In this document: piece by piece, positions 24,060-63,912 of the stretch
Position numbering within the stretch: position 1 is the first letter of the stretch
Layout of the letters: each line of letters begins with the position of its first letter
IMG/VR virus record: IMGVR_UViG_3300043446_003193
Span: 62,001 to 126,000 of that record
Reading direction: 5' to 3' (one strand)
Length of the DNA: 64,000 nucleotides
Notes under the pieces: generated by a model
The model's input: only the letters and a program-made list of their open reading frames with translations
Databases searched by the model: none
Told to the model about the DNA's origin: nothing
Translations under genes and position numbers: made by a program

Positions 24060-24107
24060 ATCTATTCTATTATCTTAAGTATAATTATATGATATAAATA
24101 TAATTTT

Positions 24108-25376
24108 TTAGTCTATTACCACTAAATCGTTGTAATTCTTTCCTTCGTAACTTCGGACCGGAAACCCACCCCTTTCCATTATCTCCTTAACCCCATTCAA
24201 TACCTCTTCTCTTTCAATCGGATGTGTATCTATAAGAAACGCATCATATGTGTATAGAATGAACTTGCTCATCTTACCTTCTAAGAAATCTAATACCTCT
24301 CTAATTTTCATATAATTCACTTCAGTCTCTAAGGCCTGTAACAGGTAACTAAACACCTTTTGTTCGGTTGCGGCTTCAATCCTACTAAAATGTATTTCTC
24401 TTTTATATAAGAGTGTCGTTAGTTTTCCAGAAATGATGAACTTTTGGTGTACTTCTCTTATCCACTCATCTACCTTTTGAAAAAACGGAATCCCTCTCGC
24501 CTTATCATCTAATCCCCCATAAAGATAACGGAAGGTTAATAACTTCGCTTCCTCATACCCAACCCCATAAAGGTCGGCAAGGTGTTGGTGAGCGGTAACC
24601 CCTTTAGGAAATTCGTATCCAACTATTTTCGCAATTAGGCGGATGTGATACGATTCGTAATCAAATTGTATTAGGGTTCCGTTGTGGTGACGGGATATAA
24701 TGGATTCTCTCGTTCCATCTCCTTTATTAAGGGCAGACCAGTTTACGTTTAGATGACGATTGGATGGACGACCGGTGATTGTGTATGGATTGTATTGTGT
24801 GTAAACGATACCACCTCTTTTGATATAAGCGGGATTGAAAGCAAAACTATCAATAAATTTTTCCTCTACGACCTTTACCCCAGCCCCTTCCAGCCTTCCC
24901 AATGTTTGTATTGCTTTGGAATATTTTAAATTCGGTTCTGTTCTTAGGGTTGGTAATGGAATTGTTTTTAGAACTTCGTACCACTTCATTAATGGTATAC
25001 AATCATTGAGTTCTTTATAATCATTTCTATACCCCTTATAAACTGATCCTACGAACTCGCTGAATATAAATGGTTTCCCATACTCTTCAAAGTATAACCA
25101 TTCAAAATCATATCCTAATCCACCAAGATACCTACTATCTAAAACGACAGTATCTTCGTTGATAAATTCCGATACATTAATCATTGGTAGTTTACCAGCA
25201 TCTATATGATGAAAATTAATAATACCGTCTTCCGATTTTGTTCTATAATAAAGAAACGACATAACTGTTCCTAATGGATGTGCTCTATGAGAACTCCAAA
25301 CGGGTATCAATAATTCTACTTTTGGTTTTGTAGATATTAGTTGTTTTAGTGTAGATTTTGTTTCAATTAAGTTCAT
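24108..25376 (-). CDS. Degenerate family A DNA polymerase (polymerase domain only)
   Basis: TITGRPS, motif A FDYESYHIRL, motif B AKLLTFRYLYGG, motif C YTYDAF. Confidence 0.75.
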   Translation of the reverse strand: MNLIETKSTLKQLISTKPKVELLIPVWSSHRAHPLGTVMSFLYYRTKSEDGIINFHHIDAGKLPMINVSEFINEDTVVLDSRYLGGLGYDFEWLYFEEYGKPFIFSEFVGSVYKGYRNDYKELNDCIPLMKWYEVLKTIPLPTLRTEPNLKYSKAIQTLGRLEGAGVKVVEEKFIDSFAFNPAYIKRGGIVYTQYNPYTITGRPSNRHLNVNWSALNKGDGTRESIISRHHNGTLIQFDYESYHIRLIAKIVGYEFPKGVTAHQHLADLYGVGYEEAKLLTFRYLYGGLDDKARGIPFFQKVDEWIREVHQKFIISGKLTTLLYKREIHFSRIEAATEQKVFSYLLQALETEVNYMKIREVLDFLEGKMSKFILYTYDAFLIDTHPIEREEVLNGVKEIMERGGFPVRSYEGKNYNDLVVID

Positions 25377-25382
25377 ACGAAC

Positions 25383-25413
25383 TCAATATACGAAAAATAT
25401 TTGTATTTACAAA
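25383..25413 (-). promoter_or_regulatory. Bacteroidota-type promoter TTTG-N19-TATATTGA
   Basis: Read from the sequence; 6 nt from the ATG of the PolA-like gene. Confidence 0.6.
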
Positions 25414-25414
25414 G

Positions 25415-25789: not shown

Positions 25790-25799
25790 ACAATTTATT

Positions 25800-28504: not shown

Positions 28505-28510
28505 TTTTTA

Positions 28511-29959: not shown

Positions 29960-29964
29960 CGTTA

Positions 29965-32730
29965 TTAAGGTTTAGTTTGTGAATTAGCAGTATATAGTGC
30001 TGCTGCTTTATTATACATTGCACTACTAATTTTCTTACCATCTAAGTATACTTGTGAATTTCCAGTAAAATCACTATCTGCATCAATTGCAAGTATATCT
30101 AATAATCTTGTCATTTCAAGCAACTGTGATATTATTGCTGCTCTAAATTGTTCTTCCGTTCCGTTTGCAATGGTTTCTAATTCGTTTTGTTCTTTTATTA
30201 TTCTTTGGGTTTCTGCATCCTGTTTTTTCTTTTCTTCTGCTGCTTTTAATGCCTCGTCTTGTTTTTTAGCATCTTCACTAAACCAATTATCCCAAATTCC
30301 TTTAATTCCACCTATTACCCCACCAACAGCTCCACCAACTGCAGTTCCAATTCCAGGTATAACACTTCCAATTGCTGCTCCATATCCACCATATTCCAAT
30401 GCAGTTGCACCAACTTTCATTCCTTTACCTTGATTAACTTTACTTCTATCTGCTTCTGCCATACCCTGTGCTTCTCTTTCTCCTCCAAAATAATCACCAG
30501 CCATAGATGCGGCTGTTCCGATTATTCCCGCTACACCTCCCTTTAAAATTCCCTTAGTCAATCCTTTCATAACGCCTTTAACTCCAACTTTACCTGCAGT
30601 TTGTAAACCAGTTTTTGCAACAGCACCAGCCGTTGATTTTCCGGCCTGTTGAAGTGCTAACTCTCTTGCTTCTTTACCCGCAAATCCTGCTAATATTTGT
30701 TTTTGTGAGAATTTTTTAACACCAGTTTCGGCTACTTCACTAGCTGCTTTTTTACCAAATATACTGGCTACTTTAGGTCCTGCTTTTTTAAATATCGTCT
30801 TTCCAATAGTACTTGCAAGAGCTACTCCACCTACTGCAACTAAAATGAATCCTAATGTTCTTAACATTTCACTAAGTTGAGTATTGAATTCAAGTTCTTT
30901 TTTAGCTTGTTCTGCTTTAGCTTGTGCGCTCCACATAGCATTAGCTGCTTCTGCATTTGCAAATTTTACACTTATTTCACCGGTTTTGAATTGTTGTGCA
31001 ATTCCGGTCATTATATTTGCTATATTATTTAATGACCCTAATTGTTTTTGTTGTTCAGTTTCTAATGGCCCACCTTTACCACCTTTTCCAATTTTCATTA
31101 TAGTTTCCATGTCCATTCCAGTTGCTTCTTGTAAAGACTGTCTTTGGAACATATTCAACTTATTTAAATCAATTCCTTTTAATTGCTGTTGTAATGCTTG
31201 AGCCGCTCCTGCTGCATCACCACCTGCAAATTTTTGTCTAACTTGAGAAAGGTCTACTTGTCTACCTAATAATGCCGATAACTGCATTTCTGATTTGATA
31301 CTATCTTTATAATTTAGTACCATTTTTTGTCCAGCTTGTAAAACTTTTTGTGCCGCAACTCCCATTACTCTAAGTGTTGCAACTTGTTTTATTAAACTTT
31401 GCTCATTACCATAATTATTTTGTAATAAAGCTTCAGATGATTCTGCTAAATCTTCGTATAAAGCGTTAATAGGAACACCGGTTGCTTTTGCCATACTCTC
31501 AGCCATTCCTAAAGAATTAACTGCTGCTTTTCCACTTAAATCTCCTACAATTCTAAATGTATTTGCAACACCTCCTAATTGTTCAGATGATACGCCAGTT
31601 CTTGCTGCAATCATCGCTATATCTGCTCCTGCTTCCTGTGCATTCTTTCCAGCTAATCCTAAATTATTAGATGCGAATTTTGTTGCTGCTCCAAAATCTT
31701 GTCCAGATACTCCCAATTTGGCCATTTGGGCCTGTAATGCTCCTGATATTTTTACATTTTGACCAAGATTCATTCCAACCTTTGTCAATTCTACATTAAG
31801 ATCAATAATACTTTCTTGCAACTTTTTGTTCATTTGTAATTGAACTTCAGTTGGCATTCCAAATAAAGATATTCCTTTGGCGTCAAATATAGTTTTCATC
31901 AAAGAACCTAAAGCGGCTCCTAATGCAAAAATACCACCTATCATAGTCATTTTACTAAGACCACTCAATGCATTTACTAATCCAGATGCACCTGATATTC
32001 CACCGGCTGCTTCCGCAGCAACTCCTGCTATTCCTTTTTGTAATTCTTGTACAGCCTTTTTACCCTCTGAAAACGCTTTTACCATTTCATGGGTAGAACC
32101 ACTTACGGATTTCATTTCATTGTATAACTTTTTAGCCTCTTCATTGGTTAAATCCATTGTATCAAGGAAAGAATCCATTTCTTCACCTGCATATTTTATA
32201 CGAGATGCTAATTGTTCTGCATCAATTTTGCCAGTTTTGAATTCTCTCATTGCTTTGGTGACAGTATTACTATAATCACCCATTGCTTTGTTAGCTTCTC
32301 TGGCAGCTGCTGCTCCTTCTTTTGTTTTGAATGCTTGTTTATCTAATTGTAATCCTATTTTTCCAATTAGACCTTCCATTGCGTTGAAAGCCTGTGCGGT
32401 TTTATTACTTTGACTTCTAATTAATGTCTGATTTCTAGACATTTTTTTAGCAATTGATAATGCTTCTTGAGCACCATCAACTTCTTCCTGCACTAAATCT
32501 CTAGCTTCTTTTCTTAGCTTTACTTCCTTCGTATATAGTTTTAATTTTTCAATTAAATCCTTTCTAAGAGCTTCATCTATTTTTTGTCCTTTGGCTTTTT
32601 CTACATTTAACTGTTTTAACGTGGCAAGTGTTTCCCTTTGAACATCTCCCAATGATTCATCGGTTGCATTTCCTGTTTTTGCAAACCCACCCGCTTCGTT
32701 TCTTAAAGTTGTATACTTTGATTTAGCCAT
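29965..32730 (-). CDS. Tape measure protein
   Basis: 921 aa helical Ala/Gly/Lys-rich protein with hydrophobic Gly-rich repeats; follows the tail chaperone. Confidence 0.8.
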   Translation of the reverse strand: MAKSKYTTLRNEAGGFAKTGNATDESLGDVQRETLATLKQLNVEKAKGQKIDEALRKDLIEKLKLYTKEVKLRKEARDLVQEEVDGAQEALSIAKKMSRNQTLIRSQSNKTAQAFNAMEGLIGKIGLQLDKQAFKTKEGAAAAREANKAMGDYSNTVTKAMREFKTGKIDAEQLASRIKYAGEEMDSFLDTMDLTNEEAKKLYNEMKSVSGSTHEMVKAFSEGKKAVQELQKGIAGVAAEAAGGISGASGLVNALSGLSKMTMIGGIFALGAALGSLMKTIFDAKGISLFGMPTEVQLQMNKKLQESIIDLNVELTKVGMNLGQNVKISGALQAQMAKLGVSGQDFGAATKFASNNLGLAGKNAQEAGADIAMIAARTGVSSEQLGGVANTFRIVGDLSGKAAVNSLGMAESMAKATGVPINALYEDLAESSEALLQNNYGNEQSLIKQVATLRVMGVAAQKVLQAGQKMVLNYKDSIKSEMQLSALLGRQVDLSQVRQKFAGGDAAGAAQALQQQLKGIDLNKLNMFQRQSLQEATGMDMETIMKIGKGGKGGPLETEQQKQLGSLNNIANIMTGIAQQFKTGEISVKFANAEAANAMWSAQAKAEQAKKELEFNTQLSEMLRTLGFILVAVGGVALASTIGKTIFKKAGPKVASIFGKKAASEVAETGVKKFSQKQILAGFAGKEARELALQQAGKSTAGAVAKTGLQTAGKVGVKGVMKGLTKGILKGGVAGIIGTAASMAGDYFGGEREAQGMAEADRSKVNQGKGMKVGATALEYGGYGAAIGSVIPGIGTAVGGAVGGVIGGIKGIWDNWFSEDAKKQDEALKAAEEKKKQDAETQRIIKEQNELETIANGTEEQFRAAIISQLLEMTRLLDILAIDADSDFTGNSQVYLDGKKISSAMYNKAAALYTANSQTKP

Positions 32731-32742
32731 TTATAAAAGATA

Positions 32743-32982: not shown

Positions 32983-33026
32983 AGTTATAGTTTTCTATTT
33001 CATATAAATATAAAATAAGTAATTAA

Positions 33027-34059: not shown

Positions 34060-34097
34060 AATATAACTTTGTGTTTAATAATATATATACACTTTTT

Positions 34098-34136
34098 AAA
34101 AAAATAAAAGGGGATATCATTTCTGATTCCCCTTTT
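34098..34136 (-). terminator. Intrinsic terminator after the tail tube gene
   Basis: AAAAGGGGAATCA-GAAA-TGATATCCCCTTTT stem (one bulge, GNRA loop) followed by ATTTTTTT. Confidence 0.8.
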
Positions 34137-34159: not shown

Positions 34160-34648
34160 TTAGTACTCTAAAATTGCGTAGTCGTATGCCAAAGTTAATT
34201 CAATTGATAACGGGTCGTTAGAAGCCCAATCCAATTCACCAAAGTTTGCTTGAGTGATAAATGCTCCTTTTAATGTCCATTGCTCAATCTTATCACCAAC
34301 TGGTCCTAATAAGTAGAAAGTAACATCTTTCTTATAGAAAGCTGCATAACCATCTCTACCTGTCAAAGATTCATGTGATTGACGAACCCACTCCATAACT
34401 TGCTGTGCTCCTGATGGAACGATTGGGTCATAAAGAGTAATGTTTACATCATCCCAAGTTGATTTTCCTTTAATCTTTCTCTTCACGTTGATGTGGTCTA
34501 ACTCAACTACTTCAGAAGTGAAAGTTGGTCTATTTGCTGTTTTGATAATGTATGATTCAATACCATTGATTTCCATAATGAATCTGTTACCAAGTTTTGG
34601 TTCAAAATTCTTATAAAACATCTTATCAAACTCTAATATTTCTGGCAT
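34160..34648 (-). CDS. gp19: Tail tube protein (T4 gp19-like)
   Basis: NRFIMEI...RPTF...LYDPI...QWTLKGAF...LTLAYDYA; follows the sheath. Confidence 0.9.
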   Translation of the reverse strand: MPEILEFDKMFYKNFEPKLGNRFIMEINGIESYIIKTANRPTFTSEVVELDHINVKRKIKGKSTWDDVNITLYDPIVPSGAQQVMEWVRQSHESLTGRDGYAAFYKKDVTFYLLGPVGDKIEQWTLKGAFITQANFGELDWASNDPLSIELTLAYDYAILEY

Positions 34649-34695
34649 TTTACTTTATTTTTATGTTGTTCTTTTATAAATATCTATTTTTCAAA

Positions 34696-36936: not shown

Positions 36937-36982
36937 TTTATATGCTTTAATTTAAATTTATTAATTCTCAATATAAATATAA

Positions 36983-37513: not shown

Positions 37514-37590
37514 AATTCAATTTTAGTTTTGTTTTGTTTGTATATAAATATATATTGTAATTTTTTTTGAAAAATGTACTTTATTATTTA

Positions 37591-42276: not shown

Positions 42277-42291
42277 TTTTTATAAATATTT

Positions 42292-49033: not shown

Positions 49034-49077
49034 CTATATTCTGTTTTTGAATATAAATATCAATTTTTACTATTAAA

Positions 49078-50540: not shown

Positions 50541-51052
50541 TAACCTCTTTTTATAACTCTAAAACCATTATTGTTTGTTACAGTTTCACATTCTACCCAA
50601 TGAGGATTTGCTTCCATAAATTCTTCAATTGCTCTATTCATATCATTTGCCCATTCGGTATCATGAAATGCAATATATTTTCTGGCTTTATTTCCATGCA
50701 ATTCTAATTCACCCTTCATTTGGTCGTAGTTGTGTTCGGTATCTATAAACAATAAATCGGTTTCTTCTATTTGAATTTCTAATGTGCTTTTTTCTATGAA
50801 CTGAAAATCTATTCCTAATTGGTTTGTTGTATCGTAAACATCATTAATATTTTCCGATGTTCTAATATCATAACAAATTAATTTTTTAGGATTTGAACCA
50901 ACCCAACCCCAAGTTGAAACAACATCTCTAACTCCAAATTCAGTTATATGTTCACATTCTTTCCCATATTTTAACATAAGGGGAAAGTGTTCACAAATAT
51001 CACAACCGGAATTACTTAGTTCTTCTATTTTTTCAGTTACATTAATTATCAT
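50540..51052 (-). CDS. Small-molecule/glycan SAM methyltransferase (Methyltransf_24-like)
   Basis: EFGVR, DLLFIDTEH, IAFHDT. Confidence 0.75.
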   Translation of the reverse strand: MIINVTEKIEELSNSGCDICEHFPLMLKYGKECEHITEFGVRDVVSTWGWVGSNPKKLICYDIRTSENINDVYDTTNQLGIDFQFIEKSTLEIQIEETDLLFIDTEHNYDQMKGELELHGNKARKYIAFHDTEWANDMNRAIEEFMEANPHWVECETVTNNNGFRVIKRG

Positions 51053-51978: not shown

Positions 51979-52010
51979 TAAATATACGAAAAATAATTTA
52001 GAATACCAAA
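51979..52010 (-). promoter_or_regulatory. Bacteroidota-type promoter TTTG-N20-TATATTTA
   Basis: The only clear copy found inside the structural region; directly upstream of the glycosyltransferase cassette. Confidence 0.65.
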
Positions 52011-52709: not shown

Positions 52710-53456
52710 TTATCCTTTTAAATTTGTAGATAATAAATAGCTTGTACCCGTTGAATATGTACCACCATCATTAAATCCAGTCAAACTTCCATCAGAATTT
52801 AATGCGTATCCTGCTGCATATAATCCTAAAAATCCATAAGCGTATTGGTCACCATTTGGTTCACCAAATGTGGCATCTTTTAACCACCATCTGCCTAAAT
52901 CAGGTACTTTCCAATCTGGTGGTCCTGATGCGTAATAATTTGGATTTCTCATAACATATGAAGTATAGTTACCATTCATATATGCTGGATATGAGCCTGC
53001 TGCAACAGTTGATGATGTTGCGTATAATTTACCAACTATTTGCATATATCCTGATAAATTTCCTAATACATTATTTGCGTATCTATACATAGCTTTAAAA
53101 TGTCCTTGACTTCTTGGATATATTAAATCCAATCCCAGTGCAGTTCCACTATGATTTGCATTTGCATAAGATACAGCAGTTCCACCACTTATTGGATAAA
53201 AATCCCATCCACCACCATCACAATCACTATCCAAATTTACATACATTTGTAATGGATTTGGCATTTTTTCATTTTGTATCCAATAATATCCACTAGTTTT
53301 TGATGGGTAGTTTCTTTTTATATCCAATCCACTTCTAGCAGGATATGAACTAGAACTACCATCTGGTGCTAATTGTTTTGATGAATCAATAATCAATGTT
53401 CCTCCAATATCTATCGGCATAATTTTATATTTTTTTAGGTGTAGCACATTCTGCAC
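52710..53456 (-). CDS. Fibrinogen-like (FReD-type) domain protein, paralogue B
   Basis: SGYYWI...PLQMYVNL...GGGWDFY; colinear with paralogue A; true start probably MPIDIGG. Confidence 0.6.
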   Translation of the reverse strand: MQNVLHLKKYKIMPIDIGGTLIIDSSKQLAPDGSSSSYPARSGLDIKRNYPSKTSGYYWIQNEKMPNPLQMYVNLDSDCDGGGWDFYPISGGTAVSYANANHSGTALGLDLIYPRSQGHFKAMYRYANNVLGNLSGYMQIVGKLYATSSTVAAGSYPAYMNGNYTSYVMRNPNYYASGPPDWKVPDLGRWWLKDATFGEPNGDQYAYGFLGLYAAGYALNSDGSLTGFNDGGTYSTGTSYLLSTNLKG

Positions 53457-55866
53457 AAACTTGCTCTAACATAAATCTGTACACTTTACATTGTTTATTA
53501 TTATATAAGAATAAATCATTTTCTCCTTCTACTATGGTATAATCTCCTATACCATTTGATAAGTCCAAATCGGATGTATATACAGTGCTCCATCTATAAG
53601 AAGAACTTCCTAAATTTTGAGTTCCATTTGCTCCAGGTCTAACAGTACCATCACCTACTATAACTAATTTATTATCATAGTTATAAAACCCAAATGATAA
53701 ATTATTACTTGAACTTTGGTCACCAACATAATTGAAAACCATTTTACCCAAATTATAAGACGCCTCTTGTTTTCCTATATTAAATGATAATCCACCACCA
53801 GTTTGACCGGATGCTAATAATGTAACAAAATCAGCATATCCACTACTTAAAGAATAAGTTGTTGTGAATCTACTTATTTGACTTCCAGATGTACATACAT
53901 GCAATGGTACTGATGGTGTTTGTATACCAATTCCTATATACCCATTTCCAGATACATAAAGAGCATCTATTGCATTTGCTCTTAATTTCATAAACCCACA
54001 TGCAGGTGTTGCGCAATGAATATATTCTACTGCACCTGCAGTTGTACCACCCGTTGGTGCTGAGAAATAAATTCTACCGTATCCAGTATCAGGAGAAAGT
54101 ATGTTTATACCTGTTATAGAAGTACTTTCAATTTGTAAACCACCTGTAAGAGAATATGCACTTGCTCCACTATTACCTTGACAAAGTTTAAGTAAATTAT
54201 TTGTTAATACAAATCTATCAATATTTGAACCAGTGGTTCTATCTACAATAGCAAATTGACAACTATTTCTTGATTGTATAGACCAACCACCACTATTAGT
54301 TGCTCCACCTTTTAAATACATTCCAGCATCCCCACCTGTTGCAACTAAACATAACATATTATATCCATCTGATGATGTATTTAATATCAGATTTGTAGAA
54401 CAGATAGTATTGGAAAAACAAGATATACCAGTAGTTGTTATTTGGAAGCGCGTAGCTGTATCATTTGATAAATCCCAGTTACTTCTTACTTCAAAATTAC
54501 CAGTTGTTGTATTTCTACCAAATGACCAAACTGTTCCAGTTTTACCCGCTGCAAAATAAGCGTTTCCAGAAGTATCTCCACAAACTTCTACTTGAATTAC
54601 TGCTTTATCTGATGAGGTACTACCACAATTATAATGATAAAGTCTATGGTCTCCGAATCCTTGTATAGATAAAGTATAAGTAGGTGCAATATTTATACCA
54701 ACACAACTATATCTATCCGCTCCTAATTTTATATACCCACAAGCGTTTGTATTTGCATCTATACCTGGTGTTAAAAATAAATGATTGCTTGTTCCACCTG
54801 CCGTTCTTATTGATGCGGCTTTATCTGCGGTTATAGCTCCACCTTGTTCACTAATAATTAAACCATTACAAGAATTTGCACCTCTTTGTAAAAATATACT
54901 ACCATTACACGCTACTAGTGAAGGTGCACATATTGTACCAGTAAAACATGCAGTACCTGTTCCTACCAAATTATTTTTAATACAAGTTGTAGTACCATTA
55001 TCAAAAATACAAGAATCAGTAATATGAAAACTATTAGTTGATTTTGGAATTACATTTGTTGTCAAACGGGTTTCATTTCCTACACTATCATATGTTTCAG
55101 GACCAGTAATCACCGTAGAAGATGTTACTGCTACGTTTCCCTGATGTACAAATATCCATTCGTTATCTGTTGAGTCAAAATAAAGTGAACCACTTGTTCC
55201 GGCAGCTGAACCACTATCTATTGCTGAAATACCTGCAAATCTAATTGATGGATTTGATGTATTTAATAATATAGTATTTGTACCAACACTTACTGCTGAA
55301 GCAGTTATATTTTGAAGAGATGATGAACCCTGAACTACTAAGTTGTTTTGAATAAAAAGAGTTCCACTTATTGTTTGATTACCAATAAAGGTATTTGAAC
55401 CCGTTGTTGCCAAACTTCCAGTTTTATTCTCTAAGTTTGTAAGACGAGTGTTTTGTGTGGTATTAAGAGTATCAACACTTGCCGATGTAGTTTCTAATGC
55501 ACTCAATCTTGCATTTTGAGTAGTGTTAGTAGTATCTACTGATGCTGATTTGGTTTCCAATGCTCCTATTCTTGCTAAGTTAGATGCAGTTATAGTTTCA
55601 ATAGACCCTAATCTTGCTAAGTTAGATGCAGTAATGGTTTCAATGCTACCTAATCTTGCGGAAGTAGATGATGTAAATGTTTCAATAGAACTCAATCTAC
55701 CATCTTGTGAACTCGTTGTTGATTGTATTCCAGTAATTACTTGATTAATAGATGAACTAAATATTTGTACATCTACTCCACTAACTGTCCCTATTACTCC
55801 ATTGGTAACTGTTAATGATCCTGTTATGATTAATGATCCTGATACGGTTGGGTTGTATTGTAGCAT
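53425..55866 (-). CDS. Tail fibre-like protein (shared module, Cys-rich)
   Basis: Shared module, 14-aa stalk repeats, C-terminal YTIVEGENDLFLYN domain. Confidence 0.7.
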   Translation of the reverse strand: MLQYNPTVSGSLIITGSLTVTNGVIGTVSGVDVQIFSSSINQVITGIQSTTSSQDGRLSSIETFTSSTSARLGSIETITASNLARLGSIETITASNLARIGALETKSASVDTTNTTQNARLSALETTSASVDTLNTTQNTRLTNLENKTGSLATTGSNTFIGNQTISGTLFIQNNLVVQGSSSLQNITASAVSVGTNTILLNTSNPSIRFAGISAIDSGSAAGTSGSLYFDSTDNEWIFVHQGNVAVTSSTVITGPETYDSVGNETRLTTNVIPKSTNSFHITDSCIFDNGTTTCIKNNLVGTGTACFTGTICAPSLVACNGSIFLQRGANSCNGLIISEQGGAITADKAASIRTAGGTSNHLFLTPGIDANTNACGYIKLGADRYSCVGINIAPTYTLSIQGFGDHRLYHYNCGSTSSDKAVIQVEVCGDTSGNAYFAAGKTGTVWSFGRNTTTGNFEVRSNWDLSNDTATRFQITTTGISCFSNTICSTNLILNTSSDGYNMLCLVATGGDAGMYLKGGATNSGGWSIQSRNSCQFAIVDRTTGSNIDRFVLTNNLLKLCQGNSGASAYSLTGGLQIESTSITGINILSPDTGYGRIYFSAPTGGTTAGAVEYIHCATPACGFMKLRANAIDALYVSGNGYIGIGIQTPSVPLHVCTSGSQISRFTTTYSLSSGYADFVTLLASGQTGGGLSFNIGKQEASYNLGKMVFNYVGDQSSSNNLSFGFYNYDNKLVIVGDGTVRPGANGTQNLGSSSYRWSTVYTSDLDLSNGIGDYTIVEGENDLFLYNNKQCKVYRFMLEQVCAECATPKKI
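55570..55659. repeat. 42-nt tandem duplication in the fibre stalk
   Basis: Units 55570-55611 and 55612-55653 encode the repeated TITASNLARLGSIE unit. Confidence 0.8.
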
Positions 55867-55906
55867 TTAGTTAGTCCGATTTGTTATTTTTTATAAATAT
55901 TATCTA

Positions 55907-56254: not shown

Positions 56255-56266
56255 AATATTAAAATT

Positions 56267-56725
56267 TTAACTATAATAACTTGTAGCTGATTGATTTTGT
56301 GCATATTCAATTATACCAACGGCACCTAAATCCAAACTATGTGAACCTATAAAAATGTTTATTCTACCTTCACTATACCCATCATTACCACTATCAAATT
56401 TAAAACACATATAATTTGGAGAAGCTATTTTGTAAATATTTGATAATGTAGTTGAACCCGTATTATAAATGTACTTATTTAAGATATCAGTACCACTATA
56501 TAAATAACATCCAGCGTGTCCAAAAATTGTACCTCTATTATATAAATATCCCCAATAATAAAAAGATAACATTGCACTACCTGATATCAAATTTGTTTTT
56601 ACATCTAAGTACCTGTTTCCTGCTCTTAATGTAAATTCACCAATGTGTTGCATCATTGGCATGCCTGATCTAGCCCATGTGTTTGTACTTGTTGCATCAC
56701 TAATTACTCTTTGAAATATTGCCAT
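56267..56725 (-). CDS. Hypothetical virion protein
   Basis: 152 aa beta-rich ORF in the fibre array. Confidence 0.55.
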   Translation of the reverse strand: MAIFQRVISDATSTNTWARSGMPMMQHIGEFTLRAGNRYLDVKTNLISGSAMLSFYYWGYLYNRGTIFGHAGCYLYSGTDILNKYIYNTGSTTLSNIYKIASPNYMCFKFDSGNDGYSEGRINIFIGSHSLDLGAVGIIEYAQNQSATSYYS

Positions 56726-56728
56726 AAT

Positions 56729-59098
56729 TTATATAATTTCTTGTAATTGAATTTTGAATTTTTTATTATTTTTGTTGTTGATGATATATAAGTTTTCAGA
56801 ACCCTCTTGTATTGTCCAATTACCATTTGTACCATCAATATCATTACCACCACATTTACCTTCATTACTTAAATGTAAGTCGTTTGTATATATGTGAGCC
56901 CAAGCACAAGTTGAAGTTCCTAAACAATATGTATTATTAGCAGATGGTGCTAAGTTTACAGATACTTGAATACCATCATCTGCAATGTGTAGTTTTAGAG
57001 TTTGATTTGATAATAATCCACCTGTCCAAAATAAGTGTCCTTTACCTGCTGATAAATTTCCACCATATTGATAATAGTTTGTATAGTCAGCTGCCGTACC
57101 GGCTCTATTACCTCTTATAATAATACTATGATTTGCATCTGCTGCGTATATCCATCCATATCCACTACTATTTACAATTCCAATATCACCACAAGTTTTA
57201 GAACTACTAACAATCAATCCGTTTCCTGCACAAACTGTTGATGAAAAACATGCAATACCAGTTCCATAGAAACTTGCGTATTCGGTTGGTGCACCGTTTA
57301 CAAATGCTATTCTTTGGCCACCAACACTAGCATATTGAACTATATACGTGTTTGATGTATTCCCTAAATATAAACCAGATGCTGATCCATCTGCTCTGTT
57401 AATTCCTATACATCCCCCATTTGTTTGAATTTGGCAACCAAAAGTAGTTATACCGTTTGCTGCAATAGTAAGTCTAGTTTGACCAGTAGTTTGAAATAAT
57501 AATCCACCATATGTCATAGCCGATCTATATGATGTACCTATTTTACCATCACATCCACTAATTCCTACATAAATACCAGCATCATTTCCACCTGCTCCTT
57601 CAAACCAAGCTACATCACAAGATGCTATACCTTTAACTTGTAATGTTTGGTATACTCCTCCTGTTGTGCTCCAAGCTTGTCCAACTCCTATACAATTTAT
57701 TACCGCTTGTGGTGCACAAATTGTATTAGAAAAACAAGAAACACCATTGGTAGTATCTATTTTCAATAAACTAGTAAAAGTAAAAGAACATCCTGCTGCC
57801 TGGCATGCGGCACCTTGAAATAATATATTTTGATTATATCCACTAACAACTATTCCGGCTGATCCGTATGATCCATTTTTAATATAAGATGTACCATTAT
57901 AGTAACCATTTGATGTAATATACATTTCTGGCAATCCAATGTAATTGGCTATATTATTTCCATTTCTACCTTCAATAATAGGTGCTACTGGATTTCCCCA
58001 ACCACTTAAAGTTGAAATACCTGATCCAAATCTATCTCCTAAAACATTACCACAAATTATAGATTGGGATGTACAAATTGTATTAGAAAAACAAGCTACA
58101 CCATTGGTATCTATTTTTAATCTAGAATTTGTATTATTAGAATAAAATACCAAATTTTTATTTGTAGATGTACTAGATGCGTAAACAAAAGTATCATTTG
58201 GATCACTATAAATTGAAAGTGGATTTGAACTTGTACATCCAAAATAATTTGTATTTGCAAATGCGTATATTGATGATCCAGCGATAACCGTACTTCCAAA
58301 ACACGCAGTTCCTGTTCCTACCAAATTATTTTTAATACAAGTTGTAGTCCCGTTATCAATAATACAAGAATCTACAATGTGGAATCCACTTTGTACTTTT
58401 GGAATGATGTTTGTCGTTAATTTAGTTTCATTACCTAAATTATCATATGTTTCAGGACCAGTAATCATTATAGATGAAGTTACTGCCAAATTTCCCTGAT
58501 GAACAAATATCCATTCGTCATCTCTTGAATCAAAATATAATGAGCCACTCTTTCCTGCAGCTGAACCACTATCTACAGCCGATATTCCTGCATATCTTAC
58601 AGATGGATTAGCAGTATTTAATAGAACAGTATTTGTACCTATACTTACCGCAGAAGCAGTAATGTTTTGAAGTGAAGAAGAACCCTGAACTACTAAGTTA
58701 TTTTGAATGTAAACAGTTCCACTTATAATTTGGTCTCCAATAAGTGTATTACTTCCAGTACTTGCCAAACTACCAGTTTTATTTTCTAAATTAGTAAGAC
58801 GAGTATTTTGAGTAGTATTTGTAGTATCTACTGATGCTGATTTGGTTTCTAATGCATTTATTCTAGCTACATTTGAAGCAGTAATTGTTTCAATAGAACT
58901 CAATCTTGCGGAAGTAGAAGATGTAAATGTATTAGTTCCAGATATACTCGCAGTAAATGTATTGGTAGATGACGTAAATGTATTATTTGCATTTATATCA
59001 ATTCCGGCAATAGATCCACTAAATGAACCCGTTAGGGATACATTTGAACCAGTTGCTACCGTTGTTGTTCCTTTTAATTGTGGCGAATATATCTTCAT
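56729..59098 (-). CDS. Tail fibre-like protein (shared module, Cys-rich)
   Basis: Shared module; C-terminal WTIQEGSENLYIIN domain. Confidence 0.7.
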   Translation of the reverse strand: MKIYSPQLKGTTTVATGSNVSLTGSFSGSIAGIDINANNTFTSSTNTFTASISGTNTFTSSTSARLSSIETITASNVARINALETKSASVDTTNTTQNTRLTNLENKTGSLASTGSNTLIGDQIISGTVYIQNNLVVQGSSSLQNITASAVSIGTNTVLLNTANPSVRYAGISAVDSGSAAGKSGSLYFDSRDDEWIFVHQGNLAVTSSIMITGPETYDNLGNETKLTTNIIPKVQSGFHIVDSCIIDNGTTTCIKNNLVGTGTACFGSTVIAGSSIYAFANTNYFGCTSSNPLSIYSDPNDTFVYASSTSTNKNLVFYSNNTNSRLKIDTNGVACFSNTICTSQSIICGNVLGDRFGSGISTLSGWGNPVAPIIEGRNGNNIANYIGLPEMYITSNGYYNGTSYIKNGSYGSAGIVVSGYNQNILFQGAACQAAGCSFTFTSLLKIDTTNGVSCFSNTICAPQAVINCIGVGQAWSTTGGVYQTLQVKGIASCDVAWFEGAGGNDAGIYVGISGCDGKIGTSYRSAMTYGGLLFQTTGQTRLTIAANGITTFGCQIQTNGGCIGINRADGSASGLYLGNTSNTYIVQYASVGGQRIAFVNGAPTEYASFYGTGIACFSSTVCAGNGLIVSSSKTCGDIGIVNSSGYGWIYAADANHSIIIRGNRAGTAADYTNYYQYGGNLSAGKGHLFWTGGLLSNQTLKLHIADDGIQVSVNLAPSANNTYCLGTSTCAWAHIYTNDLHLSNEGKCGGNDIDGTNGNWTIQEGSENLYIINNKNNKKFKIQLQEII

Positions 59099-59123
59099 TC
59101 TTTAATTCTTTTTTATAAATATT

Positions 59124-60728: not shown

Positions 60729-60734
60729 AATCTA

Positions 60735-63700
60735 TTACTTTATTTCTATTAAGTTAAATTTATATTTTTTACAACTTATTTGATTTATAATAAATAAGTC
60801 ATTTTCTCCTTCTTGTATTAACCAACTACCTCTTGTACCATCTACATAATTTGCACATTCATAATTTAAGTTACTCAATCTTAAGTCATTTGTTCCGATT
60901 GTTTTAGCAGTTAAATCACAAGCAAAACAAGCAACACCATTTGATGCTATTCTAAATCTTTCAGTAATAGAACTTGCATTTCCTCCTGTAAAAAATGATA
61001 TTCTTGCGTTTGTTCCTAATGCCGAAACATCCAATTGATCAGCACTTACATTAAATCCATATCTTTGACCATTTGAAGGGCTTTCTCCATAAAGTAATAA
61101 AGAAGGTAAACCAGCAGTACCACTTTGTCCACATATGTGCAATGTAGATAAAGGTAAAGAAGTTCCTATACCAACACAACTCCCACTTTCATAAATTGCA
61201 CTATCATAAAGATGATCACCACCACCTGATTTTGCTATGTAGTTGCAAGTCAAAGTAGTTTCAGTTCCAAAAGTTGCTGCTCTTGGTCCACTCATAATAA
61301 TACCACCACTATATCCTACTCCAGATGGATTTGAGTATAACCAACGATTACATACTGAATCCCAAAGAATTGATCCAGTTACACCTGCAGAACTTCCACT
61401 ATCTTGTACACTTATACCTGCATATCTAACTGCAGGTGTTGAAGTATTTAAAGTTACAATATTTGTTCCAATACTTACTGAACTCGCTGAAATATACTGA
61501 ATAGATGAAGAACCTATTACTATTAAGTCGCCGGTTACATATGTTGAACCACTCATAATAGTAGTTCCTTTGAATGTATTACTTCCGGTTGTTGCTAAAG
61601 AACCAGTTAGTGATTCAATACTATTTAATCTATTTGTTTGTACTAAATCAGTTGTTGCAATAGAAGAACTAAATGTTGAATAGTTATTAGTTAAAGTTAC
61701 ATCAACTTGTGATGAACCAGATACAACACCATTATTTGCGTATATTGAACCACTAAATCCTGTTGAACATATGTTACCGCTAAATTTACCAGTACCTTCA
61801 ACATATAATGTGTATCCGGTATTTGCGTATTCGTTATTAATGTTTACACTTCTGCTGTAAAAATTTGCTATCGTTTGTCCGGCAACAATTGTTCTAATAT
61901 TTGTAGTTTGACTATTATTTGTATCAAAGTATGTATTATTACTCCAACCCAATCCATATCCAGGTTGTATTCTAGCACCTTGTTCTAAATTAGAAAATCC
62001 TCCAATATATAAATCATCCCAAAGATGTGTAGGGTCTCCTAAACTATATGCACTATATGTTACATTAGTTGCAGGTATTACATTTTGATTTAATGAATTT
62101 AAGTAAGATGCAGTTAATGAATTTACTGCGTTTGAAGCAGTTACATATGCTATTGGTGTCCAACTTGCAGTATAAGGTGAACCTGCTGAAACTTGTAAAA
62201 CATATCCTGCATAAGATGAACTAATAGAAGGTAAGTCACCACCTATTGTACCAATTGCCCAACCTGCTGCCGCTTCAGGGAATGTAATTAGAGATGAAGT
62301 GTTATCCGTTAATACAATTGTTTGAGGAATTATTTTCTCGTAATTACTGTCAAATGTTTGGATATTAACAAATCTATCTCCAAAATTATGTTCAAATCTC
62401 CATTCTAAAGAAGATGTAAAACTTTGTTTAACTGTTCTACCATTCACTTCAATTATACCACCAATACCTGCTACCGCGTATCCAGCAACTGGTGTACCAA
62501 ATTCTAAAACTAAAGTATTCACATCAGTTGCAGTAATGGTTTGTGGAAGAACTATTTGTCCGGAATTATTATAAACCGTTACATTTGGATATTGTACATT
62601 TAAATTATGCGTGAATGTCCAAGTTGCTGCAGAGGTAGTTTGTGTATGTATTTTTCCACCTCCAGTTAATCCGGTCAATAGAGAACCATCACCTTTGAAT
62701 GAACCAGTAAATGAACCAGTGAACGGGTCTGTTAAGGTTACAAATTGTGCAGATCCAGATATTAATGTAGGTTTTTCAGTTAATTCAGTAAATGTAATTG
62801 GTGTACCTACTTGTCTATATCTTAAATCTAAAGATGCTGTTGTTTGTTCTGAACCACTAATAATTCCGCCTGGTTTATTTGCAATATTGTCCCAAGTTGT
62901 TTGAGTTATTGAACCGCTTAAAACATATCTATTATCGTATGAAGCGGTCAATTGTGCAGATGAACTTACTAAACCATTTGATGCAGATATTGGGCCCGTT
63001 ACTTGTAAAGTACCATTAACTATTATTTTATTTCCACCCGTTTGAGTAATAATAGAATCGGAAATGTGGTCATCTCCACTTGCTACCGGAAGATATCCAG
63101 TTGTTAAACCAATTTCATTTCCCAAAGAACCCGTATTTTTAGGTCCTGCTATTAATATTGCCGAACTATATGCTGCTCCAGATGGATTTTCGTATATCCA
63201 ATGATTATTTACCGAATCCCACCAAAGAGAACCGGTTCCAGATGTACTTCCAGAATCTTGTACACTTATACCACCAAAACGAACTGCAGGTGTTGCTGTA
63301 TTTAATAAAACCGTATTTGTTCCAATACTTACTGCCGAACCCGTAATATTTTGAATTGATGATGTACCTTGAACAATTAAATTTTCAGTTACATATAAAG
63401 AACCACTCATTATTTGTGTTCCTTTAAATGTATTTGAACCAGTTGTTGCAAATGAAGATTCAATTACATCTAATCTTGTATCAATTGATGCGGATAAAAC
63501 ATTTGTACTTGCTGCACTTGCACTAAATGATGTTGCAACGGAGGAACTAAAGTCTCCAGTAACAGTTGAAACCGAAGCAGATAATGCTGAAATATTTGCA
63601 TTACTTGCACTTATTGATGTTGCAACGGAAGAAGAAAATGATTGTGTAAATGAATTAATAGCAGATAACGAAGTATCAACCGATGCCGATTTTGCTTCCA

Positions 63701-63878
63701 AAGAATTTAATCTCAATGCCTGTGAACCACTATCTGTTGATAATTCATTAAGCCTTTGATTAATTGAAGCGGAAGCAGCTAAAAACGAAGACGATACTGC
63801 TGTATATCTAGGTATTTCTGCTGTTTGTCCGGCTTGCTGTATTAAGGAACCGGTTATAATAGGACTATCTAAAATCAT
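60735..63878 (-). CDS. Large tail fibre-like protein with two copies of the shared module
   Basis: Module at both ends; two WTFTHNL/WRFEHNF repeats; C-terminal WLIQEGENDLFIIN domain. Confidence 0.7.
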   Translation of the reverse strand: MILDSPIITGSLIQQAGQTAEIPRYTAVSSSFLAASASINQRLNELSTDSGSQALRLNSLEAKSASVDTSLSAINSFTQSFSSSVATSISASNANISALSASVSTVTGDFSSSVATSFSASAASTNVLSASIDTRLDVIESSFATTGSNTFKGTQIMSGSLYVTENLIVQGTSSIQNITGSAVSIGTNTVLLNTATPAVRFGGISVQDSGSTSGTGSLWWDSVNNHWIYENPSGAAYSSAILIAGPKNTGSLGNEIGLTTGYLPVASGDDHISDSIITQTGGNKIIVNGTLQVTGPISASNGLVSSSAQLTASYDNRYVLSGSITQTTWDNIANKPGGIISGSEQTTASLDLRYRQVGTPITFTELTEKPTLISGSAQFVTLTDPFTGSFTGSFKGDGSLLTGLTGGGKIHTQTTSAATWTFTHNLNVQYPNVTVYNNSGQIVLPQTITATDVNTLVLEFGTPVAGYAVAGIGGIIEVNGRTVKQSFTSSLEWRFEHNFGDRFVNIQTFDSNYEKIIPQTIVLTDNTSSLITFPEAAAGWAIGTIGGDLPSISSSYAGYVLQVSAGSPYTASWTPIAYVTASNAVNSLTASYLNSLNQNVIPATNVTYSAYSLGDPTHLWDDLYIGGFSNLEQGARIQPGYGLGWSNNTYFDTNNSQTTNIRTIVAGQTIANFYSRSVNINNEYANTGYTLYVEGTGKFSGNICSTGFSGSIYANNGVVSGSSQVDVTLTNNYSTFSSSIATTDLVQTNRLNSIESLTGSLATTGSNTFKGTTIMSGSTYVTGDLIVIGSSSIQYISASSVSIGTNIVTLNTSTPAVRYAGISVQDSGSSAGVTGSILWDSVCNRWLYSNPSGVGYSGGIIMSGPRAATFGTETTLTCNYIAKSGGGDHLYDSAIYESGSCVGIGTSLPLSTLHICGQSGTAGLPSLLLYGESPSNGQRYGFNVSADQLDVSALGTNARISFFTGGNASSITERFRIASNGVACFACDLTAKTIGTNDLRLSNLNYECANYVDGTRGSWLIQEGENDLFIINQISCKKYKFNLIEIK

Positions 63879-63912
63879 TTCTCCGTTTTATTTAAGTATA
63901 AATATCTTTATG

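What the first reader, a model, noticed from the sequence alone, without database searches (positions are those of the whole stretch)
24093..63904. Late-gene motif TATTTATA is the reverse complement of the T4 late promoter and resembles a -7-only host box
Seen: 10 exact copies plus one variant, each just upstream of structural or late-looking genes and mostly without a TTTG -33 element. T4 gp55 reads TATAAATA on the coding strand; here the coding strand has TATTTATA, usually as ATATTTATA, which overlaps the TATATTTA form of the host-type -7 box. Inference: a phage late sigma factor that evolved to read only a Bacteroidota-like -7 element, paralleling T4 logic with a different sequence.
Basis: partly seen in the sequence, partly recalled or inferred. 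Interest (0 to 1): 0.6.

Follow-up and report, generated by a model that had tools for sequence, protein, structure and literature searches.

The report
Phage late promoter ATATTTATA with gp55-like sigma
A strict 9-base signal, ATATTTATA, sits just upstream of the tail, head and lysis genes of this 209-kb T4-related phage, and it is most likely the late promoter read by a distant relative of the T4 late sigma factor gp55 that the phage encodes outside the window.

Summary
The raw window count of TATTTATA (19) is no more than chance; the signal lies in strand and placement. Genome-wide, 32 copies lie within 60 nt upstream of gene starts on the coding strand, against 3.6±1.9 in shuffles. The T4 form TATAAATA is not enriched. 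The element is a strict 9-mer, ATATTTATA, with no conserved -33 partner. It is concentrated in the morphogenesis block and also precedes the endolysin. It is invariant in 47 of 51 variants of one intergenic spacer. The 8-mer core recurs before structural genes of Flavobacterium phage immuto and phage Mel-JY01.

A second, bipartite class (TTTGGTAat…TATATT) fits the Bacteroidota host consensus. It drives tRNAs, replication genes and the operon ending in gene g12. g12 is a remote gp55 homologue: its best structural match is T4 gp55, and the reciprocal profile hit in the T4 genome is gene 55.

Its "reverse complement" and "host -7 box" readings are not. The motif is better read as a same-orientation variant of the T4 box (TAT-TT-ATA against TAT-AA-ATA). 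This is a new variant of a known kind. No transcript data were available.

The parts
63897..63905 (-). ATATTTATA late-promoter candidate, 18 nt before the ATG of the 1047-aa gene (window 60735-63878)
59114..59122 (-). ATATTTATA, 15 nt before the ATG of the 789-aa gene (56729-59098)
55892..55900 (-). ATATTTATA, 25 nt before the ATG of the 813-aa gene (53425-55866)
49052..49060 (-). ATATTTATA, 18 nt before the ATG of the 784-aa gene (46679-49033)
42281..42289 (-). ATATTTATA, 4 nt before the ATG of the 773-aa gene (39955-42276). The mRNA would be leaderless, or the true start codon lies downstream
37543..37551 (-). ATATTTATA, 29 nt before the ATG of a 152-aa gene (37055-37513)
36972..36980 (-). 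ATATTTATA, 35 nt before the ATG of the tail sheath gene (34696-36936; phrog_23, E 7e-70)
34675..34683 (-). ATATTTATA, 26 nt before the ATG of the tail tube gene (34160-34648; phrog_4542, E 4e-32). The 9-mer is exact in 47 of 51 distinct IMG/VR variants of this spacer
33003..33011 (-). ATATTTATA, 20 nt before the ATG of a 79-aa ORF that heads the 921-aa gene (29965-32730)
24093..24101 (-). ATATTTATA, 33 nt before the ATG of the 694-aa gene (21975-24059)
20208..20241 (-). Composite promoter before the gp32-like SSB gene (19263-20111): TTTGGAAAATCC…CGTATATTTATA, a host-type -33/-7 pair overlapping an exact ATATTTATA
51981..52010 (-). Host-type bipartite (early) promoter TTTGGTAT…CGTATATT before the 299-aa gene (51052-51951)
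25385..25413 (-). Host-type bipartite promoter before the 422-aa gene (24108-25376)
21551..21580 (-). Host-type bipartite promoter before the 104-aa gene (21230-21544)
8177..8206 (-). Host-type bipartite promoter before the 239-aa candidate sliding clamp (7427-8146; weak PCNA_C match, E 0.0017, below the Pfam cut-off)
1134..1163 (-). Host-type bipartite promoter before the 288-aa exonuclease gene (261-1127)

Best explanation
ATATTTATA (core TATTTATA) is the late promoter of a T4-superfamily myovirus that probably infects a Bacteroidota host. Host RNA polymerase with the host primary sigma first uses about 25 bipartite promoters (aaATTTGGTAat - spacer - ttTcg TATATT). These drive tRNAs, a tmRNA, metabolic and replication genes, and an operon whose last gene, g12, encodes a 230-aa gp55-like sigma factor. 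g12 then replaces the host sigma on the core enzyme by binding the beta-prime clamp helices through its sigma-2-like domain. It directs transcription from about 35 sites that carry only the 9-mer at about -10, upstream of head, tail, baseplate, fibre and lysis genes.

By analogy with the solved T4 complex, the motif aligns as T-13 A-12 T-11 T-10 T-9 A-8 T-7 A-6. The two deep pockets that take A-12 and A-8 in T4 are conserved in g12. The shallow pocket that reads A-9 is changed, and this fits the AA-to-TT change in the box.

Shown: motif statistics, placement, conservation, gene classes, and the homology and fold of g12. Inferred: that g12 reads this motif, the register, the timing, the transcription start sites and the pocket logic.
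For: Motif.
- 32 copies against 3.6±1.9 expected upstream of genes; the T4 form is not enriched.
- It is a strict 9-mer, and single-mismatch forms are not enriched.
- No conserved position lies between -45 and -3.
- No strong upstream k-mer was found.
- 23 of 84 genes in the morphogenesis block carry it, against 9 of 128 elsewhere (odds ratio 5, p = 1.2e-4). The bipartite class shows the reverse pattern.
- Downstream genes include sheath, tube, the terminase operon, portal-region genes and a head-tail adaptor, and the endolysin and a spanin-like gene.
- Footprint: the 9-mer is exact in 47 of 51 distinct tube-upstream variants, while the flanks vary.
- TATTTATA is the top intergenic 8-mer in the structural modules of immuto and Mel-JY01, whose major capsid proteins are 53-55% identical to this phage's.

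Sigma factor g12.
- The T4 gp55 family model phrog_234 hits an immuto ORF (E 0.008). The homologue of that ORF in this genome is g12 (E 2.4e-39).
- A profile of 84 family members has T4 gp55 (7d7c_F) as its best PDB sequence hit (E 0.13, residues 9-157 against 5-159).
- hhalign against T4 gp55 gives E 2.7e-4.
- 9 of 84 members hit phrog_234, best E 6.4e-6.
- The same profile run over the whole T4 genome picks gene 55 as its best hit (E 0.0035). It finds homologues in immuto, Mel-JY01 and RM378.
- The AlphaFold model has pLDDT 93. Its top structural match is 7d7c_F (Z 10.4, rmsd 4.8 Å, 117 residues), and all other top matches are sigma factors.
- Pocket residues: T4 Y97, T99 and F86 correspond to the conserved Y92, T94 and Y82. 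H95 and N13 correspond to F90 and T13, which are changed (functions from PMC7892883).
- Complex prediction of g12 residues 1-125 with Flavobacterium johnsoniae RpoC residues 200-400: ipSAE 0.68, best control 0.00. This mark was reached by 51 of 78 solved complexes and by 2 of 108 mismatched pairs. The three runs agree in at least 75% of contacts, and partner pLDDT is at least 72. The interface is beta-prime 288-319 against g12 helices 29-41 and 61-77, the canonical sigma-2/clamp-helix contact. The pass may reflect memory of solved sigma complexes.

Other points.
- g12 closes an operon headed by a bipartite promoter.
- No phage RNA polymerase was found with Pfam models.
- The T4-like replication genes include gp43-, gp44/62-, gp32- and UvsX-like proteins.
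Against: - No transcript 5' ends or timing data exist: no RNA run was listed.
- g12 itself hits no Pfam or PHROG model. The homology rests on profiles with weak E-values and on a helical fold, where Z of about 10 is not decisive on its own.
- g12 lacks the C-terminal clamp-binding tail of T4 gp55 and has an extra 100-aa helical domain instead.
- No gp33 homologue was found, and the clamp candidate is weak. The T4 activation mechanism may therefore not apply.
- Three sites lie only 3-6 nt before the called ATG. A T4-like start-site spacing would put the 5' end inside or past the start codon there.
- Nine sites precede genes outside the morphogenesis block, for example a NifU-like gene and an HNH endonuclease.
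- Only 3 of 35 sites follow a terminator-like hairpin.
Confidence: 0.72

Rival explanations
1. The motif is a -33-independent promoter read by the host primary sigma (sigma-A of Bacteroidota). It would act as a strong or extended -7 box, switched on late by some other phage factor such as an anti-sigma-4 appropriator, as in Thermus phage P23-45 or T4 AsiA. On this reading g12 has another role.
For: In 23 of 36 sites the motif reads TATATTTA, a 7-of-8 match to TAnnTTTG (consensus from PMC7366714). The early -7 box of this phage is TATATT, which overlaps it. Three promoters combine a -33 TTTG with ATATTTATA, before the SSB gene, g144 and g176.
Against: The bases that are strictly kept (…TATA at the 3' end) lie outside the host box. 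The T needed for the host register is only 64% conserved, and the G of TAnnTTTG never occurs. In immuto the flank is AC, so the host register is lost while the core is kept. A gp55-type sigma is encoded, is conserved across the clade, and co-occurs with the motif.
Confidence: 0.12
2. The motif acts at the RNA level as UAUUUAUA in the 5' leader, for example as an endonuclease processing site or a translation or stability element for late mRNAs.
For: It is strand-specific and lies 3-35 nt before start codons, often within tiny intergenic gaps of long co-oriented gene strings. Bacteroidota lack Shine-Dalgarno-based initiation and use A-rich leaders (PMC6847099, listed).
Against: The distance to the ATG varies tenfold, which does not fit a position-dependent translation signal. 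The motif's length, strictness, AT-rich TATA-like form and lack of a partner element match T4-type late promoters (PMC2988020). The genome encodes the matching class of sigma factor.
Confidence: 0.08
3. The factor reads the canonical T4 box TATAAATA on the opposite strand, so the sites are antisense promoters firing against the genes.
For: TATTTATA is the exact reverse complement of TATAAATA, and g12 is a gp55 homologue.
Against: No ORF of 150 aa or more lies on that strand anywhere in 209 kb. The sites keep a preferred distance to the downstream ATG (mostly 11-35 nt) rather than to the upstream stop codon (2-75 nt). The residues of the A-9 pocket differ from T4, as expected for a changed box.
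Confidence: 0.03
4. The pattern is a chance by-product of AT-rich intergenic DNA.
For: The whole-window count (19) equals the shuffle expectation. The genome is 68% A+T.
Against: The excess in dinucleotide-matched upstream windows is about 15 standard deviations. The equally AT-rich complement is not enriched. The motif is conserved across relatives.
Confidence: 0.01

Closest known systems
Bacteriophage T4 late promoters (TATAAATA, centred near -10) read by gp55 with gp33 and the gp45 sliding clamp
   Same: A single strict 8-9 bp AT-only box with no -35 or -33 element sits directly upstream of morphogenesis and lysis genes. There are dozens of copies per genome (T4: 50 sites, 32 perfect; PMC2988020). 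The phage encodes a sigma-2-type factor homologous to gp55, with the A-12 and A-8 pocket residues conserved. The replication genes are T4-type (gp43, gp44/62, gp32, UvsX).
   Different: The box differs at two central positions (TT instead of AA at -10/-9) and has an extra conserved 5' A. The factor is 230 aa, has a roughly 100-aa helical C-terminal domain, and lacks the acidic-hydrophobic clamp-binding tail. No gp33 homologue was found. The clamp candidate is weak. The inferred host is a Bacteroidota species rather than a proteobacterium or cyanobacterium.
Late-promoter variants in other T4-related phages (KVP40, 44RR, S-PM2: near-identical consensus; Aeh1: a/gC at -13/-12), as reviewed in PMC2988020
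   Same: These are in-silico consensus variants of the same box in the same phage superfamily.
   Different: The known variants change the 5' edge or keep the AAA core. Here the core itself is changed. The clade (immuto, Mel-JY01 and many uncultured relatives) is much more distant, with a DNA polymerase about 30% identical to T4-type polymerases.
Bacteroidota primary-sigma promoters (-33 TTTG / -7 TAnnTTTG)
   Same: The second motif class of this phage (TTTGGTAat, about 20 nt, TATATT) fits this consensus. The late motif partly overlaps the -7 box in two thirds of its sites.
   Different: The late motif has no -33 element and never has the G. Its conserved 3' TA lies outside the host box, and the overlap register is lost in phage immuto.
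-35-less middle and late promoters of Thermus phage P23-45, used by host holoenzyme after phage gp39/gp76 remodelling
   Same: Late genes use a promoter with only a -10-type element.
   Different: In P23-45 the host sigma is kept and remodelled. Here a dedicated gp55-type sigma is encoded, and no gp39-like factor was looked for.

Membership tests
T4-type (gp55-dependent) late promoter | A single short AT-rich box at about -10, with no conserved -35/-33 element | tested here: met
   No position from -45 to -3 exceeds 0.4 bit. The upstream k-mer test finds nothing strong.
T4-type (gp55-dependent) late promoter | Box sequence TATAAATA | tested here: not met
   The coding strand carries TATTTATA, a 6-of-8 match in the same orientation. 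TATAAATA is at the chance level upstream of genes, 5 against 5.3.
T4-type (gp55-dependent) late promoter | Located upstream of late (morphogenesis, lysis) genes | tested here: met
   (odds ratio 5, p = 1.2e-4). A minority of sites precede other genes.
T4-type (gp55-dependent) late promoter | Transcripts start a few nucleotides downstream of the box, late in infection | not testable with these tools
   No RNA run was listed for this sequence.
T4-type (gp55-dependent) late promoter | Activation by the sliding clamp (gp45) through the clamp-binding tails of gp55 and gp33 | tested here: inconclusive
   A clamp loader is present. The clamp candidate has only a weak PCNA_C match, and phrog_223 gives no hit. 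g12 has no T4-like C-terminal tail. The C-terminal domain is unrelated to gp33.
gp55 late sigma family (PHROG 234) | Sequence homology to gp55 | tested here: met
   The homology is remote but reciprocal. g12 alone is below threshold.
gp55 late sigma family (PHROG 234) | Sigma region-2-like fold as in PDB 7D7C chain F | tested here: met
   The top VIA-align match is 7d7c_F (Z 10.4, rmsd 4.8 Å, 117 aligned residues), and the other top hits are sigma-2 domains. The helical-fold caveat applies.
gp55 late sigma family (PHROG 234) | Base-flipping pocket residues (T4 Y97, T99, F86, L54; N13, H95) | tested here: inconclusive
   Y92, T94, Y82 and V51 are conserved, while F90 and T13 differ. The comparison rests on a profile alignment only.
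gp55 late sigma family (PHROG 234) | Binds the RNA polymerase core at the beta-prime clamp helices | tested here: met
   This is a prediction only: ipSAE 0.68 against a best control of 0.00. The mark was reached by 51 of 78 solved complexes and 2 of 108 mismatched pairs. The interface is beta-prime 288-319. The result may reflect memory of solved sigma complexes.
Bacteroidota sigma-A promoter (-33 TTTG / -7 TAnnTTTG) | TTTG about 19-20 nt upstream of the -7 box | tested here: not met
   5 of 36 late sites have it, against a 5.8% background. The 25 early-class sites do meet this feature.
Bacteroidota sigma-A promoter (-33 TTTG / -7 TAnnTTTG) | -7 box TAnnTTTG | tested here: not met
   The G never occurs, and the leading T is present in 23 of 36 sites. 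The register is absent in immuto.
Canonical sigma-70 family (Pfam Sigma70_r2 / r4_2) | Match to the Pfam region 2 or region 4 models | tested here: not met
   There is no match anywhere in the genome at E ≤ 1, and no Pfam hit for g12.

The most novel reading that the evidence does not exclude
A very large, environmentally abundant clade of far-T4 phages of Bacteroidota uses a re-specified late box, TATTTATA. It is read by a gp55 descendant with two changes. Its A-9 pocket has been rebuilt (His to Phe/Tyr, Asn to Thr/Gly). The clamp-binding tail has been replaced by a sigma-4-like or HTH-like domain that stands in for gp33. This would give a clamp-independent, two-domain 'minimal sigma' that links T4 gp55 to ordinary sigma factors. 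The clade is large: there are 1310 representatives at 50% identity and 3308 clusters at 90% identity of the sigma gene.
Probability: 0.3. Interest if true: 0.7.

Novelty: new variant of a known kind. Interest (0 to 1): 0.55.

Why it matters
T4 late transcription is the textbook case of a minimal sigma factor that reads only a -10-type box and is activated by the replication clamp. A distant branch of the same phage superfamily appears to have changed two bases of the box and the matching pocket residues of the factor. It has also replaced the clamp-binding tail with a folded domain. That makes it a natural experiment on how sigma-2 pockets encode base specificity, and on whether clamp coupling is ancestral.

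There are practical uses too. The 9-mer and the bipartite early motif give a ready way to annotate early and late genes in a very abundant group of uncultured phages, many of whose proteins have no known function. They also offer candidate parts for gene expression in Bacteroidota, where few promoters are characterised. A cultured relative, Flavobacterium phage immuto, makes the hypothesis directly testable.

Tried and rejected
- Canonical sigma domains: Pfam Sigma70_r2 and r4_2 gave no hit in the genome.
- Direct six-frame searches of the genome with phrog_234, phrog_12791 (gp55) and phrog_223 (gp45) gave no hit. The first-look filter misses remote homologues. g12 was reached only through the immuto ORF.
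- Pairwise phmmer of T4 gp55, T4 gp45 and the annotated RM378 sigma (p144) against all ORFs gave nothing significant. g12 was merely the top gp55 hit, at E 0.21. RM378 p144 is unrelated to the g12 family.
- g12 alone against PHROGs and Pfam gave no family.
- C-terminal domain of g12: structural matches reach only Z 5-6. Sigma region 3/4 domains recur among many unrelated helical proteins, so the result is inconclusive. Sequence hits are only to TrpR-like HTH proteins, at E 0.2-0.4. There is no relation to T4 gp33.
- Phage-encoded RNA polymerase: Pfam RNA_pol, Rpb2_6 and Rpb1_2 models gave no hit. The T7-type model had no positive control, and divergent virion polymerases would be missed.
- Terminator-then-promoter arrangement as independent evidence for promoters: only 3 of 35 sites show it.
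- Avoidance of the 9-mer inside genes: 7 observed against 9.6±2.9 expected, not significant.
- Public RNA data: none was listed.
- The tail-fibre-like 1100-aa protein and 20 kb of window DNA had no match in the phage collection.
- Literature search for the motif, or for promoter work on immuto or Mel-JY01, found nothing relevant.

Full report
**1. What the window is**

The window is bases 62001-126000 of a single 209,443-bp viral contig with 31.8% G+C. IMG/VR and CheckV rate it complete. Every ORF of 150 aa or more lies on the minus strand, across the whole genome.

PHROG scans identify a T4-superfamily myovirus:
- gp23-like major head protein, portal, large terminase, gp21-type prohead protease and baseplate wedge proteins;
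- tail sheath and tail tube;
- gp43-type DNA polymerase, gp44/62 clamp loader, gp32-like SSB, UvsX, DnaB-like helicase, SbcCD and ribonucleotide reductase.

The closest deposited phages are Microcystis phage Mel-JY01 and Flavobacterium phage vB_FspM_immuto, whose capsid proteins are 55% and 53% identical. Rhodothermus phage RM378 follows at 39%. Very close relatives are abundant in metagenomes: 595 viral contigs encode the tube protein, and the best 80 are 90% or more identical.

**2. The observation**

The window holds 19 copies of TATTTATA, which is what shuffles give (16.4±3.8). Abundance is therefore not the signal. Strand and placement are.
- 17 of the 19 copies are on the coding strand.
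They end 4-35 nt before an ATG, and all are preceded by A.
- Genome-wide, 34 of the 53 coding-strand copies fall in the 5.4% of the sequence that is intergenic.
- 32 copies lie in the -60..-1 windows of 212 ORF starts. One thousand dinucleotide shuffles of those same windows give 3.59±1.87, with a maximum of 11.
- The equally AT-rich complement TATAAATA is at expectation, 5 against 5.27.

An unbiased k-mer screen returns ATATTTAT, TATTTATA and TATATTTA as the most enriched intergenic 8-mers, and ATATTTATA as the top 9-mer, with 31 of its 38 copies intergenic. The element is strict. Almost no single-mismatch version of positions 2-10 of TATATTTATA is found upstream of genes, and only the first base is free. 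No position from -45 to -3 relative to the motif is conserved. An upstream k-mer comparison finds nothing beyond a weak TTGGA signal, which comes from a few composite promoters.

**3. A second promoter class**

The same screen revealed TTTTTCGTATATT and TTTGGTAAT. These belong to one bipartite element, aaATTTGGTAat - spacer - ttTcg TATATT, with about 20 nt between TTTG and TATATT. There are 25 intergenic copies.

This fits the Bacteroidota primary-sigma consensus of TTTG at -33 and TAnnTTTG at -7 (PMC7366714). Together with the Flavobacterium-phage relatives, it points to a Bacteroidota host.

These sites precede:
- the cluster of 19 tRNA genes and a tmRNA gene;
- CobS/CobT-like genes and a phosphohydrolase;
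- an endonuclease;
- the candidate sliding clamp;
- an exonuclease;
- the SSB gene.

They are depleted in the morphogenesis block (3 of 84 genes against 16 of 128, p = 0.03). ATATTTATA is enriched there (23 of 84 against 9 of 128, odds ratio 5, p = 1.2e-4). Outside that block the 9-mer precedes the GH19-type endolysin and a spanin-like gene. The two classes thus behave as early and late promoters.

**4. Conservation**

In 78 IMG/VR relatives, the spacer between the sheath stop codon and the tube start codon occurs in 51 distinct versions. 47 of them keep ATATTTATA exactly, while the flanking intergenic bases vary.

At greater distance, TATTTATA is the top intergenic 8-mer in the 41-kb structural modules of immuto (all 10 copies intergenic) and of Mel-JY01 (6 of 9). 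In both it sits 15-40 nt before terminase, portal, sheath or tube genes. The flank differs: ACTATTTATAA in immuto, ATATTTATAT in Mel-JY01 and here. The conserved unit is therefore the 8-mer core.

**5. The factor**

Direct searches for sigma-70 domains and for the gp55 and gp45 PHROG families found nothing in the genome. The gp55 family model did touch an ORF in immuto (E 0.008). The homologue of that ORF here is g12 (E 2.4e-39). g12 is 230 aa and lies at genome 202295-202984 on the minus strand (L010:14996-15685), outside the window.

g12 is the last gene of a six-gene operon headed by a bipartite promoter. Its family is very large: 3308 clusters at 90% identity and 1310 representatives at 50% identity.

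The evidence that g12 is a gp55 homologue is as follows.
- A profile of 84 diverse members has T4 gp55 as its best hit among all PDB sequences (E 0.13, nearly end to end over the sigma-2 part).
- hhalign against T4 gp55 gives E 2.7e-4.
- 9 of the 84 members hit phrog_234 directly (best 6.4e-6), and 7 hit another phage sigma family.
- Run over the whole T4 genome in six frames, the profile's best hit is gene 55 (E 0.0035). It also finds homologues in immuto, Mel-JY01 and RM378.
- The AlphaFold model is confident (pLDDT 93).
- After re-alignment of Foldseek's candidates, the best match is gp55 in the T4 open complex (7d7c_F; Z 10.4, rmsd 4.8 Å, 117 residues). Every other high match is a sigma factor.
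- A complex prediction of g12 residues 1-125 with residues 200-400 of Flavobacterium johnsoniae RpoC scored 0.68, with a best control of 0.00. That mark was reached by 51 of 78 solved complexes and by 2 of 108 mismatched pairs. The runs agree in at least 75% of contacts, and partner pLDDT is at least 72.
- In that model beta-prime 288-319 (the clamp helices) packs against g12 helices 29-41 and 61-77. This is the canonical sigma-2/core interface. It may be recalled from solved complexes, so it shows likeness, not binding.

No phage RNA polymerase was detected.

**6. How the box may be read**

The T4 structure paper reports that gp55 flips the non-template bases at -12, -9 and -8 into pockets. 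Y97 stacks on A-12 and T99 bonds A-8, both in deep pockets. N13 and H95 line the shallow pocket for A-9 (PMC7892883).

T4 late promoters are an 8-bp TATA-type box with no -35 conservation. There are 50 sites, 32 of them perfect (PMC2988020).

Placed in the same orientation, TATTTATA differs from TATAAATA only at -10 and -9, and it keeps A-12 and A-8. In a profile alignment:
- T4 Y97, T99, F86 and L54 correspond to g12 Y92 (Y in 79 of 84 members), T94 (S/T in 56 of 84), Y82 (Y/F in 81 of 84) and V51 (I/L/V);
- H95 corresponds to F90 (F/Y in all 84 members), and N13 to T13 (T/G/S/D).

The parts of the box that stay the same thus face conserved residues, and the part that changed faces changed residues. 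This is an inference from alignment, not a demonstration.

**7. Where it departs from T4**

- g12 lacks the acidic-hydrophobic C-terminal clamp-binding tail of gp55.
- It carries instead a confident four-helix domain at residues 124-230. The structural neighbours of this domain include sigma regions 3/4, but only at Z 5-6, which is not distinctive for helical domains. Its sequence neighbours are TrpR-like HTH proteins at E 0.2-0.4.
- The domain is unrelated to gp33, and no gp33 homologue was found.
- The clamp candidate has only a sub-threshold PCNA_C match.

Whether late transcription here is coupled to the clamp is open.

**8.

The late-promoter reading and the prediction of a gp55-like factor elsewhere in the genome are borne out in silico.

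The 'reverse complement' point is literally true but follows from the near-palindromy of the T4 box. The motif is co-oriented with the genes and matches the T4 box at 6 of 8 positions directly.

The 'host -7-only box' idea is not supported, for three reasons:
- the host register needs a leading T that is present in only 23 of 36 sites, and a G that never occurs;
- the strictly kept 3' TA lies outside the host box;
- the register is lost in immuto.

**9. Limits**

- Gene starts come from a simple longest-ATG ORF caller.
- There are no transcript data.
- The host is inferred.
- The homology of g12 to gp55 is remote.
- Three sites lie 3-6 nt from the called ATG. This implies either leaderless mRNAs or miscalled start codons.

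The rivals (host sigma with another factor, an RNA-level signal, antisense promoters, chance) are weighed in their own sections. Together I give them about a quarter of the probability.

Noticed in passing
whole genome (G000:C1:1-209443), including window 1-64000: All of roughly 212 ORFs lie on one strand, with no ORF of 150 aa or more on the other strand across 209 kb. GC skew is uniformly negative across the window. Such complete unidirectionality is unusual for a T4-superfamily phage, where late genes run in both directions.
   Followed up: partly
window 1134-1163, 8177-8206, 20212-20241, 20647-20674, 21551-21580, 25385-25413, 51981-52010 (minus strand), plus 18 more outside the window: A second promoter class, aaATTTGGTAat - spacer - ttTcgTATATT (25 intergenic copies), matches the Bacteroidota -33/-7 consensus. 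It has an extra conserved GTAAT after TTTG and T-rich/CG bases before the -7 box. It probably marks the early and replication-gene promoters.
   Followed up: yes
L002:13965-19046 and L003:1015-1496 (genome about 14.0-20.8 kb): There is a cluster of 19 tRNA genes (one with an odd 2-base anticodon call) and a tmRNA gene with tag peptide ending …GADYAVAA. Several are preceded by the bipartite promoters.
   Followed up: partly
L005:9548-11116, 11899-13125, 17566-18618 (minus strand; window about 5860-7430, 8207-9436, 13874-14929) and L005:1042-3694: Three paralogous methyltransferase-like proteins (phrog_12517/498) and two glycosyltransferase-like proteins sit inside the replication module. This hints at DNA hypermodification. 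A citing paper lists immuto among phages with 7-deazaguanine modifications (PMC10516641; title and listing only).
   Followed up: no
L015:981-1580 and L100 (RM378 17107-17817): Rhodothermus phage RM378 has both an annotated 'RNA polymerase sigma factor' (p144), unrelated to the g12 family, and a separate g12-family homologue (E 1.7e-16). Its upstream regions show ATTTAAA-like strings rather than TATTTATA.
   Followed up: partly
proteins P0138, P0140, P0142, P0144, P0151 (g12 family): Some family members extend past the end of g12 with short tails ending in FF/F-x-F plus acidic residues. These are reminiscent of the clamp-binding epitope of T4 gp55. g12 itself ends right after the folded domain.
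   Followed up: no
L014 (PP395634, Microcystis phage Mel-JY01): The closest deposited relative is recorded as a cyanobacterial (Microcystis) phage. Yet it shares the capsid protein, polymerase, g12-type sigma and TATTTATA box with a Flavobacterium phage and with this genome. I did not check its host assignment or its early promoters.
   Followed up: no
L009:4943-11035, L009:157-4950, L010:203-5233, L008:11653-15735 (minus strand): Four giant ORFs of 2031, 1598, 1677 and 1361 aa lie near the structural genes and are mostly without family matches. Only a tail-fibre C-terminus and an N-terminal cytidylyltransferase domain were recognised.
   Followed up: partly
window 16566-16883 (minus); L010:15951-16583; L004:8733-9140; L002:5480-9236: Auxiliary genes are present: a GroES-like co-chaperonin, a peptide deformylase, a NifU-like Fe-S scaffold (behind a late-type motif) and CobS/CobT-like proteins.
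   Followed up: no
window 42506-42514 and 56541-56549 (minus strand): Two exact ATATTTATA copies lie inside ORFs, 229 nt before the 773-aa gene and inside the 152-aa gene. They could be internal promoters or chance copies; 7 such in-ORF copies occur genome-wide, against 9.6 expected.
   Followed up: partly
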